Positions 50,012-50,356 of a stretch of DNA of 50,685 nt are shown in pieces. Position 1 is the first letter of the stretch; each line of letters starts with the position of its first letter. Made by a program: the position numbers and the translations under genes. Where the stretch lies: the NCBI RefSeq assembly GCF_001194135.2, contig NC_069002.1:4540733-4591417 (forward strand). The letters run 5' to 3'. Below the pieces are notes generated by a model. It was not told the DNA's origin, made no database searches, and saw only the letters and a list, made by a program, of their open reading frames with translations. The DNA is from Octopus bimaculoides (taxonomy: Eukaryota).

Positions 50012-50107
50012 TGCTCTCAGCGTGATATAGCCGTAAGCAAAAAGTAAAGTCAACCTCAGTGGAATTTGAACTCAGAACAAAATACTGCGAAGCATTTCAC
50101 TCGGCAT
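50012..50107 (-). repeat. left arm of a perfect 96-bp inverted duplication of 50168-50263
   Basis: Base-by-base reverse complement, embedded in (TA)n. Confidence 0.95.
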
Positions 50108-50138
50108 ATATATATACACACATACACACACACAGACA

Positions 50139-50236
50139 CAAGGTGGCAAGCTAGCAGAATCGTTAGCATGCCGAGTGAAATGCTTCGCAGTATTTTGTTC
50201 TGAGTTCAAATTCCACTGAGGTTGACTTTACTTTTT
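50139..50236 (+). mobile_element. SINE family A head (tRNA-derived), truncated at gactttacttttt
   Basis: caaggtggcaagctagcagaatcgttagc...gttctgagttcaaattcc...gaggttgacttt aligns with 1514-1615. Confidence 0.85.
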
Positions 50237-50356
50237 GCTTACGGCTATATCACGCTGAGAGCACTGGTTCTCGTCCGATCACCGAAGTTAAGCAACGTCG
50301 AGCCTAGTGAGTACTTAGATGGGTGTCCGCTTGGGAAACCTAGGTACTGTAAGCAT
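50237..50356 (+). rRNA. full-length (120 nt) 5S rRNA-like sequence, probably a retroposed or SINE copy
   Basis: gcttacggctatatcacgctgagagcactggttctcgtccgatcaccgaagttaagcaacgtcgagcc...gtacttagatggg..ccgcttgggaa...ctgtaagcat. Helix I gcttacgg/ctgtaagc; ICR box A- and box C-like motifs; no TTTT terminator follows. Confidence 0.9.

What the first reader, a model, noticed from the sequence alone, without database searches (positions are those of the whole stretch)
50012..50263. Perfect 96-bp inverted duplication of the SINE/5S junction (60-nt spacer)
Seen: 50012-50107 is the exact reverse complement of 50168-50263, covering 69 nt of SINE head and 27 nt of 5S, and sits inside a (TA)n tract. It postdates the chimera and is very recent or homogenised. 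Inference: a template-switch insertion that would make a 96-bp perfect dsRNA or cruciform sequestering the 5S 5' strand. Coleoid cephalopods have extensive ADAR editing (known), so it could be an editing or siRNA substrate. An assembly artefact is possible.
Basis: partly seen in the sequence, partly recalled or inferred. Interest (0 to 1): 0.7.

Follow-up and report, generated by a model that had tools for sequence, protein, structure and literature searches.

The report
Young inverted copy beside SINE/5S element
A 93-96-base stretch across the junction of an old SINE/5S retro-element was copied backwards into an (AT)n microsatellite 60 bases upstream, most likely by a DNA template switch, making a perfect hairpin-forming repeat; I could not check it against sequencing reads and nothing shows it has a function.

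Summary
50012-50107 is the exact reverse complement of 50168-50263 (96 nt, 60-nt spacer). It is the only non-low-complexity exact inverted match of 24 nt or more in the window. The right arm lies in an intact element: SINE head 50142-50236, then a full 5S match 50237-50355, then an A-rich tail. It is therefore the source, and the left arm is the copy. Removing 50013-50105 restores a perfect in-phase (AT)14 run, with 1 nt (T) and 2 nt (AT) of junction microhomology. That is the signature of a template-switch (snap-back) insertion into a microsatellite with no loss of target sequence. The arms share the 14.7% divergence and the 12-nt deletion of this SINE copy. All other repeat pairs in the window are 65-84% identical, so the copy is young (pairwise divergence below 3.1% at 95%). 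Length, fidelity and distance fit a replicative template switch better than polymerase theta repair. The functional ideas (dsRNA, ADAR, siRNA) are untested, and no Pol III unit can include both arms. This is an ordinary kind of event and an unusually long example.

The parts
49995..50012 (.). Upstream half of the (AT)n target tract (18-nt perfect AT run ending at the outer junction; T50012 could belong to the tract or to the copy)
50012..50107 (-). Left arm, the derived copy: reverse complement of SINE head position ~27 to its end plus 5S nt 1-27. The unambiguous inserted core is 50013-50105 (93 nt)
50108..50141 (.). First part of the spacer: the rest of the compound microsatellite (AT)n(AC)n, continuous and in phase with 49995-50012 once the insert is removed
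50142..50167 (+). Second part of the spacer: the first 26 nt of the SINE head, including the box-A-like TAGCAGA (50152-50158). This part was not duplicated
50166..50171 (.). GCATGC palindrome at the inner switch point. Its central AT (50168-50169) is the 2-nt microhomology with the (AT)n tract
   Evidence: read directly from the sequence
50168..50263 (+). Right arm, the template: lies in uninterrupted context inside the SINE/5S element. Contains the box-B-like GAGTTCAAATTCC (50202-50214) and T-runs at 50193-50196 and 50232-50236
50142..50236 (+). Head of a SINE family with at least 6 other diverged copies in the window. This copy is 14.7% diverged from their consensus within the arm, has a 12-nt deletion, and leaves the consensus at ~50236
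50237..50355 (+). Full-length 5S rRNA-like sequence (Rfam RF00001, 100.4 bits, model positions 1-120). Solitary, fused to the SINE head, with no T-run terminator after it
50356..50440 (+). Unique 3' segment and A-rich tail that close the retro-element, followed by a TA-rich microsatellite
   Evidence: read directly; no similar sequence elsewhere in the window

Best explanation
This is a real, evolutionarily young inverted duplication made in one step by a DNA template switch. An old retro-element (SINE head fused to a complete 5S copy, with an A-rich tail) sat directly downstream of a compound (AT)14(AC)n microsatellite. While a DNA strand was being synthesised through the (AT)n tract, its 3' end came off the template. 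It re-paired through the dinucleotide AT inside a GCATGC palindrome 60 nt away, either on itself (snap-back) or on the opposite strand. It then copied 93-96 nt in the reverse-complement direction, across the SINE/5S junction and up to 5S nucleotide 27, and returned to the (AT)n tract in register through a single A/T pair. The product is a pure insertion with no loss of target sequence, giving a perfect 96-bp inverted repeat with a 60-nt spacer. Shown here: the repeat, which arm is source and which is copy, the restored empty site, the microhomologies, and the youth of the copy relative to the element. Inferred: the enzymology (a high-fidelity replicative or break-induced synthesis rather than polymerase theta), and that the event is selectively neutral with no function. 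The hairpin would form in RNA only if a Pol II transcript happens to read through both arms.
For: The repeat is exact and unique in the window. The right arm continues seamlessly into SINE nt 1-26 upstream and 5S nt 28-119 downstream, while the left arm is bounded on both sides by AT repeat. Removing 50013-50105 (or 50013-50107) yields a perfect 27-29-nt AT run across the joint, with T and AT as the only ambiguous junction bases. The SINE/5S junction is locus-specific: six other SINE copies in the window continue with ...CATCCTTTCGGGGTCGATAAAATAAGTACC instead. The arms share this copy's 10 substitutions (8 are C>T or G>A) and its 12-nt deletion. All other repeat pairs in the window are 65-84% identical. 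Zero differences in 96 nt bounds pairwise divergence at 0.031 (95%), median 0.007. Template-switch mutations are documented to create perfect hairpins in a single event, with tracts of up to 83 nt, and at loci with no prior similarity (PMC10710096; PMC8794818). Polymerase theta inserts average ~10 bp, carry ~1 error per 30 bp and ~85% prime within 10 bp of the break (PMC5068794), which fits an error-free 96-nt copy taken from 60 nt away poorly.
Against: There is no independent evidence that the sequence exists in the organism. Eight exact-product look-ups of nearby ORFs in public assemblies found nothing, which is uninformative. At 93-96 nt the tract is longer than the longest template-switch event quoted in the literature I read (83 nt). 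No ancestral or empty allele was observed. The 14.7% divergence could partly predate insertion if the source was a diverged master copy, which weakens the 'much younger than the element' argument, though not the empty-site argument.
Confidence: 0.58

Rival explanations
1. Assembly or library artefact. The left arm is not in the genome. It entered the consensus through a chimeric molecule (in-vitro snap-back or PCR jumping at the AT repeat) or through faulty gap closure in an under-covered (AT)n tract. Polishing would then make the two arms identical.
For: The scaffold is gappy, with 14 N-runs, most beside microsatellites, the nearest at 49288-49337. Perfect arm identity is what an artefact would give. 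The insert lies in exactly the sequence class that short reads cover worst. Foldback and palindromic chimeras are a documented library artefact (PMC12870357; PMC6218980). No read-level check could be made.
Against: The structure has two novel junctions, and the sequence returns to the correct upstream flank in register with the AT repeat. Documented foldback artefacts have one breakpoint near the middle of the read, with arms running to the read ends. Both junction sequences must have been present in reads for a k-mer or overlap assembler to write them. No other perfect inverted or direct duplication occurs anywhere in the 50.7-kb window, so there is no systematic duplication error here. The spacer orientation chosen by the assembly is the one that leaves one element fully intact.
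Confidence: 0.25
2. Retrotransposition-coupled origin. The inverted arm was made by the reverse transcriptase when the SINE/5S chimera inserted, either by twin priming from the upstream target end on the RNA or by snap-back of the cDNA. The arms are identical because the whole insertion is young and was copied from an already diverged master.
For: An upstream (TA)n 3' end priming on the RNA at 5S nt 27 would produce exactly the antisense left arm, and the outer junction has the required 1-nt match. The element is itself a template-switch-type chimera with an A-rich tail. TA-rich sequence on both sides could hide target-site duplications.
Against: The direct copy is full length, so the inverted segment overlaps it completely by 96 nt. 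Classical twin priming instead gives complementary segments with little overlap (established knowledge of L1 twin priming). The 34 nt between the inverted segment and SINE nt 1 are (AT)5(AC)n, which continue the upstream AT run in phase. That is expected for pre-existing target DNA and not for filler between two cDNA ends. The inverted copy stops at SINE nt 27 instead of running to the RNA 5' end.
Confidence: 0.08
3. DNA double-strand break in the (AT)n tract repaired by polymerase theta end joining, with a cis snap-back templated insertion.
For: A reverse-complement insert templated from the adjacent flank with 1-2 nt priming homology is the described snap-back signature (PMC5068794 S7 legend; PMC4912351 and PMC5728401 listed). 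The junction microhomologies here are T and AT.
Against: Reported inserts average ~10 bp, ~85% prime within 10 bp of the break, the error rate is ~1 in 30 bp, and they normally accompany a deletion. Here the insert is 93-96 nt, the template starts 60 nt away, there are no errors, and no deletion is visible.
Confidence: 0.06
4. An old inverted repeat (or a second, independently inserted and truncated family copy) whose arms are kept identical by gene conversion, or a foldback/MITE-like mobile element with 96-bp terminal inverted repeats.
For: The left arm abuts TA, which is the target duplication of Tc1/mariner-type MITEs.
Against: The right arm's outer end is not an element boundary, because it runs straight on into 5S nt 28-119, and there is no TA at that side. 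The SINE/5S junction is locus-specific among the window's copies, and other family copies differ by 16-35%, so an independent copy would not be identical. A fragment truncated at both ends and lacking the 3' tail is not a normal SINE insertion. Arms of 96 nt are short for efficient gene conversion (general knowledge).
Confidence: 0.03

Closest known systems
Template-switch mutations (TSMs) that create perfect hairpins in one replication event (four-point model; Monttinen, Frilander & Loytynoja 2023, PMC10710096; Monttinen & Loytynoja 2022, PMC8794818)
   Same: A reverse-complement copy of nearby sequence on the same molecule. No pre-existing similarity is needed. Synthesis returns to the original template. 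The result is a perfect stem-loop produced in a single event.
   Different: The tract here is 93-96 nt with a 60-nt loop, longer than the 28-83-nt events quoted and outside their 30-55-nt 'miRNA-like' stem window. It is a pure insertion into a microsatellite, whereas their pipeline excluded events that overlap simple repeats by more than 50%. The ancestral state is not observed here.
Polymerase theta-mediated end joining with snap-back templated insertion (van Schendel et al. 2016, PMC5068794)
   Same: A reverse-complement insert copied in cis from the flank, primed by 1-2 nt of homology.
   Different: About ten times longer than typical, templated from 60 nt away, error-free, and with no accompanying deletion.
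Neighbouring inverted SINE pairs that form long dsRNA and are hyper-edited by ADAR, reported as especially abundant in Octopus bimaculoides (Porath et al. 2017, PMC5625713)
   Same: It would give a long, perfect intramolecular duplex containing SINE sequence if both arms lie in one transcript.
   Different: The arms here are not two independent SINE insertions. They are a local duplicate of one decayed copy, so they are 100% identical and span a SINE/5S junction. Transcription and editing were not tested.
Chimeric retro-copies formed by reverse-transcriptase template switching onto small RNAs such as U6 or 5S
   Same: The host element has that layout: a full-length small-RNA copy (5S) joined to other retro-sequence, ending in an A-rich tail.
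   Different: This describes the substrate, not the inverted duplication. Here a SINE head lies 5' of the 5S, and whether the chimera is a single locus or a family could not be tested.
Foldback or palindromic chimeric reads from library preparation (Heinz, Meyerson & Li 2026, PMC12870357; Pacasus, PMC6218980)
   Same: An inverted duplication of adjacent sequence with a short unaligned gap at the turn.
   Different: Those artefacts have one breakpoint and arms that run to the read ends. This locus has a bounded arm, two junctions, and a return to the upstream flank.

Membership tests
Template-switch mutation (TSM) | The new sequence is the exact reverse complement of a nearby stretch on the same molecule | tested here: met
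   96/96 nt; template lies 60-155 nt from the insertion site
Template-switch mutation (TSM) | The source region is unchanged and in its native context; only the target site is altered | tested here: met
   The right arm is continuous with SINE nt 1-26 and 5S nt 28-119
Template-switch mutation (TSM) | Synthesis returns to the original template at or next to the point where it left | tested here: met
   Excision of 50013-50105 restores a perfect 29-nt AT run
Template-switch mutation (TSM) | The ancestral (pre-event) state is seen in an outgroup or another allele | not testable with these tools
Polymerase theta snap-back templated insertion | Reverse-complement insert from the cis flank with priming homology of about 1 nt | tested here: met
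   T and AT microhomologies
Polymerase theta snap-back templated insertion | Short (~10 bp), error-prone (~1 in 30 bp), primed within ~10 bp of the break, usually with a deletion (PMC5068794) | tested here: not met
   93-96 nt, 0 errors, template 60 nt away, no deletion
Twin-priming inversion of a retro-element | Inverted 5' segment and direct 3' segment are complementary parts of one RNA and abut each other, with target-site duplications around the whole | tested here: not met
   The direct copy is full length, overlap is 96 nt, and 34 nt of in-phase microsatellite lie between the segments. Target-site duplications cannot be scored in TA-rich flanks
MITE / foldback transposon | Terminal inverted repeats that end the element, flanked by a target-site duplication | tested here: not met
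   The right arm's end lies inside the 5S, which continues uninterrupted; no TA at that side
miRNA / hairpin-RNA gene | Match to a curated precursor family at its gathering score | tested here: not met
   MIR869 100.7 bits against gathering 330; mir-242 41.1 against 54; mir-980 37 against 47. These are non-specific hits of a long hairpin
miRNA / hairpin-RNA gene | Transcription through both arms, and small RNAs from the stem | not testable with these tools
ADAR hyper-editing substrate | Long, near-perfect intramolecular dsRNA | tested here: inconclusive
   Predicted duplex of 96 bp, -189 kcal/mol, z = -29.5, but only if both arms are co-transcribed. Pol III cannot do this because of T-runs and because box A is not duplicated
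ADAR hyper-editing substrate | A-to-G mismatches clustered in RNA reads over the arms | not testable with these tools
5S rRNA (Rfam RF00001) | Sequence and structure match above the gathering score | tested here: met
   100.4 bits against 38, full length
Functional 5S rRNA gene | Pol III T-run terminator directly after the gene; usually in tandem arrays | tested here: not met
   No T4 run after 50355; it is the only 5S in the window, fused to a SINE head and followed by an A-rich tail
tRNA-derived SINE | Head recognisable as tRNA-like | tested here: inconclusive
   ARAGORN found 0 genes and there was no Rfam tRNA hit at E<=5. Only a box-A-like TAGCAGA and a box-B-like GAGTTCAAATTCC motif are visible. 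Interspersed multi-copy status is met, with 6 other copies
Long-read foldback artefact | Single strand-switch breakpoint near the read midpoint, with arms extending to the read ends | tested here: not met
   Two junctions, a bounded 96-nt arm, and a return to the upstream flank

The most novel reading that the evidence does not exclude
The hairpin is real, lies inside a Pol II transcription unit, and is a newborn hairpin-RNA locus. It would be a 96-bp perfect duplex made in one mutational step that is either hyper-edited by ADAR or diced into small RNAs with perfect complementarity to SINE-bearing transcripts and to the 5' 27 nt of 5S rRNA. That would catch the birth of a regulatory hairpin in a cephalopod, through a template switch about twice as long as those described in primates.
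Probability: 0.06. Interest if true: 0.55.

Novelty: new member of a known kind. Interest (0 to 1): 0.3.

Why it matters
If real, this is a clean and unusually long example (93-96 nt) of a one-step template-switch insertion. It has a fully reconstructable empty site, minimal microhomology, and a microsatellite as the point of derailment. That supports the view that AT repeats seed such events and that long perfect hairpins can arise instantly from non-palindromic DNA. It would also show that some of the long perfect dsRNA-forming loci reported as abundant in octopus may be local inverted duplications and not pairs of independent SINE insertions. Beyond that it is a single, probably neutral, non-coding structural mutation in repeat-rich DNA. 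If it is an artefact, it is a useful warning about microsatellite-embedded inverted duplications in short-read scaffolds.

Tried and rejected
(1) The look-up of sequencing runs returned 'closed for now, do not try again'. No read-level test of either junction, of polymorphism, of transcription or of editing was therefore made.

(2) As a separate, permitted route I used the look-up of encoding contigs within its own rules. I looked up eight window-encoded ORFs: five crossing the novel junctions (one of them from an alternative ATG start), two others within 2.5 kb of the repeat, and the transposase-like ORF about 20 kb away. None is on record. This is uninformative, because mechanical ORFs in non-coding DNA are not expected to have been called as genes.

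(3) A scan of metagenome contigs for the SINE/5S junction pattern gave 0 hits. That collection would not be expected to hold this host genome, so the question of single locus versus family stays open.

(4) My first BLAST screen for other inverted duplications wrongly returned nothing. BLAST reports the focal repeat as one 253-nt self-palindromic alignment at 83.8% identity, below my 90% filter. I replaced it with an exact k-mer screen and a masked BLAST.

(5) Rfam at permissive thresholds gave only sub-threshold long-hairpin miRNA matches and microsatellite-type mir-297/466 matches. I rejected these as non-specific.

(6) The MITE/foldback-element, twin-priming, independent-insertion and gene-conversion readings were considered and rejected on anatomy (see rival explanations).

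(7) Taxon check: one homology search with the transposase-like ORF gave Octopus bimaculoides as the best named hit, but only at 69% identity and alongside crustacean hits. The cephalopod assignment is therefore plausible but not established here.

(8) I first considered arguing that the 5S part is visibly decayed. I dropped this because at least one apparent change (CCUAG pairing with CUAGG) is compensatory and the Rfam score is that of a well-formed 5S. Without the species' own 5S sequence, decay cannot be claimed.

Full report
OBSERVATION. The repeat finder lists arms 50012-50107 and 50168-50263: 96 nt, 100% complementary, 60 nt apart (pair I17). A direct string comparison confirms this and shows that neither arm can be extended by even one base at either end. 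A 60-nt core of the arm has two matches in the window against 0 expected in 100 shuffles. An exhaustive screen for exact reverse-complement matches of 24 nt or more found 3,983 pairs. All but this one are microsatellite sequence, so this is the only non-low-complexity perfect inverted match in 50,685 bases.

WHAT THE ARMS ARE MADE OF. Rfam finds one full-length 5S rRNA match at 50237-50355 on the + strand (100.4 bits against a gathering score of 38, model positions 1-120). Directly upstream, 50142-50236 is the head of an interspersed repeat with at least six other diverged copies in the window. In those copies the head continues with ...GCCTTTCATCCTTTCGGGGTCGATAAAATAAGTACC.... The focal copy leaves that consensus at about 50236 and runs straight into 5S nucleotide 1. 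After the 5S come about 55 nt of unique sequence and an A-rich tail ending near 50440, and there is no T-run terminator. The host element is therefore a SINE-head/5S/A-tail retro-chimera, and among the copies visible here the SINE/5S junction is specific to this locus. I could not show that the head is tRNA-like: ARAGORN and a permissive Rfam scan found no tRNA match. Only a box-A-like TAGCAGA (50152-50158) and a box-B-like GAGTTCAAATTCC (50202-50214) are visible.

SOURCE AND COPY. The right arm is continuous with SINE nt 1-26 on one side and 5S nt 28-119 on the other, so it sits in native context. The left arm is bounded on both sides by AT repeat. The right arm is therefore the template and the left arm is the derived copy.

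THE EMPTY SITE. If T50012 is assigned to the flank, removing 50013-50105 (93 nt) joins ...ATATATATATATAT to ATATATATATACACAC... and gives a perfect AT run of 29 nt across the joint. Removing 50013-50107 gives 27 nt. The site before the event was thus a compound (AT)14(AC)n microsatellite directly upstream of the SINE head. The event was a pure insertion with no loss of target sequence. The only junction ambiguity is 1 nt (T/A) at the outer end and 2 nt (AT) at the inner end. The inner AT is the centre of a GCATGC palindrome at 50166-50171.

This is the expected product if a 3' end being extended through the AT tract dissociates and re-pairs by AT with the site 60 nt away. That site could be on its own nascent strand (snap-back) or on the opposite strand. 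The end then copies 93-96 nt in the reverse-complement direction and returns to the AT tract in register. Read on the minus strand, the new DNA runs ATGCCGAG...GAGAGCA from 50107 to 50012, which is what extension of a minus-strand 3' end folded back onto itself would produce.

AGE. Within the arm, the SINE portion differs from the consensus of the window's other copies at 10 of 68 aligned positions (14.7%). Eight of the ten are C>T or G>A changes, and there is also a 12-nt deletion. Both arms carry all of these differences. Every other inverted or direct repeat pair in the window is 65-84% identical. Zero differences in 96 nt puts pairwise divergence below 0.031 at 95% (0.007 at P = 0.5). The copy was therefore made from this already-diverged locus and is young. 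One caveat applies: part of the 14.7% could have been present in the master copy before insertion, so 'much younger than the element' is a likely inference and is not proven. The empty-site argument does not depend on it. I make no claim that the 5S part is decayed, because its Rfam score is that of a well-formed 5S and I have no reference 5S for the species.

WHICH MECHANISM. Template-switch mutations are documented to create perfect hairpins in one event, at loci with no prior similarity, by an intrastrand or interstrand switch. Tracts of 28 nt and of up to 83 nt are quoted, and more than 6,000 such hairpins are reported in primates (PMC10710096; PMC8794818). Polymerase theta snap-back synthesis also gives reverse-complement inserts with single-nucleotide priming. 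In C. elegans, however, those inserts average ~10 bp, ~85% prime within 10 bp of the break, the error rate is ~1 per 30 bp, and they accompany deletions (PMC5068794). A 93-96-nt error-free copy from 60 nt away with no deletion fits a high-fidelity replicative (or break-induced) switch better. Sequence alone cannot separate the two.

A retrotransposition-coupled origin of the twin-priming type would also place an antisense segment upstream. It is less likely for three reasons: the direct copy is full length (96-nt overlap), the 34 nt between the segments continue the upstream AT run in phase, and the inverted copy stops at SINE nt 27. A MITE or foldback element is excluded because the right arm's outer end is not a boundary of anything: the 5S simply continues.

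ARTEFACT. This is the main rival and I could not test it. The window is a short-read scaffold with 14 N-runs of 10-843 nt, the nearest at 49288-49337.

I used the look-up of encoding contigs, a separate tool, within its stated rules on eight window ORFs. Five of them cross the novel junctions. Nothing was on record, which says nothing either way.

Several points count against an artefact:
- There are two novel junctions, and the sequence returns in register to the true upstream flank. Described foldback artefacts have one breakpoint near the read midpoint, with arms running to the read ends (PMC12870357).
- Both junction sequences must have been present in reads for an assembler to write them.
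- The window shows no other perfect duplication, direct or inverted.
- The spacer orientation in the assembly is the one that leaves one element fully intact.

I put the artefact at about 0.25.

FUNCTION. As one RNA, 50002-50273 folds into the full 96-bp stem (-189.1 kcal/mol, z = -29.5). As single-stranded DNA it gives -123.3 kcal/mol. Nothing here shows such an RNA exists.

Pol III cannot make it. The box-A-like motif lies in the spacer and was not duplicated. A transcript from the SINE head starts downstream of the left arm. In either direction the second arm to be transcribed presents TTTT and TTTTT runs (50193-50196 and 50232-50236 on +, and their mirror images 50079-50082 and 50039-50043 on -). 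Only Pol II read-through could produce the hairpin, and the window offers no evidence of a host gene. Its ORFs are microsatellite translations, apart from a Tc1/mariner-like fragment and a zinc-finger remnant.

The sub-threshold hits to long-hairpin miRNA models (MIR869 100.7 bits against 330) are non-specific. Porath et al. report that O. bimaculoides has the strongest hyper-editing signal and an exceptionally high fraction (4.4e-3) of loci able to form long near-perfect dsRNA (PMC5625713). If this is octopus DNA and the locus is transcribed, editing would be expected and unremarkable. The taxon is only weakly supported here (best named hit O. bimaculoides at 69% identity).

At the DNA level, a 60-nt spacer disfavours cruciform extrusion, but hairpins could form on single-stranded templates. 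Perfect inverted repeats of this kind are known to be recombination-prone (general knowledge), which is consistent with the repeat being young.

VERDICT. The functional part is untested and partly disfavoured. The event belongs to a known class (template-switch inverted duplication) and is an unusually long example with clean junctions. Because it rests on a single draft assembly, interest is modest (0.3).

Noticed in passing
window 50142-50440: The host element is itself a chimera: a SINE head truncated at ~95 nt, fused to a complete 5S rRNA-like sequence (100.4 bits), then ~55 nt of unique sequence and an A-rich tail, with no Pol III terminator. It looks like a reverse-transcriptase template-switch retro-copy. 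Whether it is a single locus or a 5S-carrying SINE family could not be tested (0 hits in metagenome contigs).
   Followed up: partly
window 50193-50196: A 12-nt deletion in this SINE head, relative to the other six copies, creates a TTTT run. That run would terminate any Pol III transcript from the head after ~55 nt.
   Followed up: partly
window ~1514-1760, 3721-3954(-), 9872-9990(-), 34834-34945, 36366-36441(-), 43261-43352(-): Six further diverged copies (68-87% identity) of the same SINE family, several ending in trinucleotide (ATT/GTT-type) microsatellite tails. The pair 1523-1756 / 3954-3721 is an ordinary inverted SINE pair at 77.6% identity, 1,964 nt apart.
   Followed up: partly
window, 14 N-runs (1104-1113 ... 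49288-49337): Gaps of 10-843 nt, mostly flanked by microsatellites. A large share of the window is TA/CA/tetranucleotide repeat, and nearly all ORFs of 90 aa or more are translations of such repeats.
   Followed up: no
window 29287-29646 (+): 119-aa ORF from a Tc1/mariner-type transposase remnant (homologues carry PF13358). The best named homologue is an Octopus bimaculoides protein at 69% identity, followed by crustacean proteins. The ORF itself has no Pfam hit.
   Followed up: partly
window 40477-40827 (+): 116-aa ORF ending in a C2H2-type zinc-finger motif. All Pfam hits are below their gathering scores. It may be a retro-element remnant.
   Followed up: no
window 18937-19150: Tandem repeat of a 78-nt unit, 2.7 copies, 94% matches. 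Weaker similarity extends over 18450-19153.
   Followed up: no
window 21703-21965: (AGAT)n array of about 66 copies at 90% matches. Related tetranucleotide arrays at ~14150-14430, 23444-23700 and 47000-47200 cross-match it.
   Followed up: no
window 49940-50013 and 50442-50510: TA/TG microsatellite stretches give sub-threshold matches to mir-297/mir-466/mir-1277-type precursor models (for example 44.8 bits against a gathering score of 90). These are microsatellite look-alikes and not evidence of miRNA genes.
   Followed up: no
window 540-662, 3552-3688, 7250-7374: Self-palindromic stretches of 120-150 nt at 69-78% identity, probably repeat-derived. I did not examine them.
   Followed up: no
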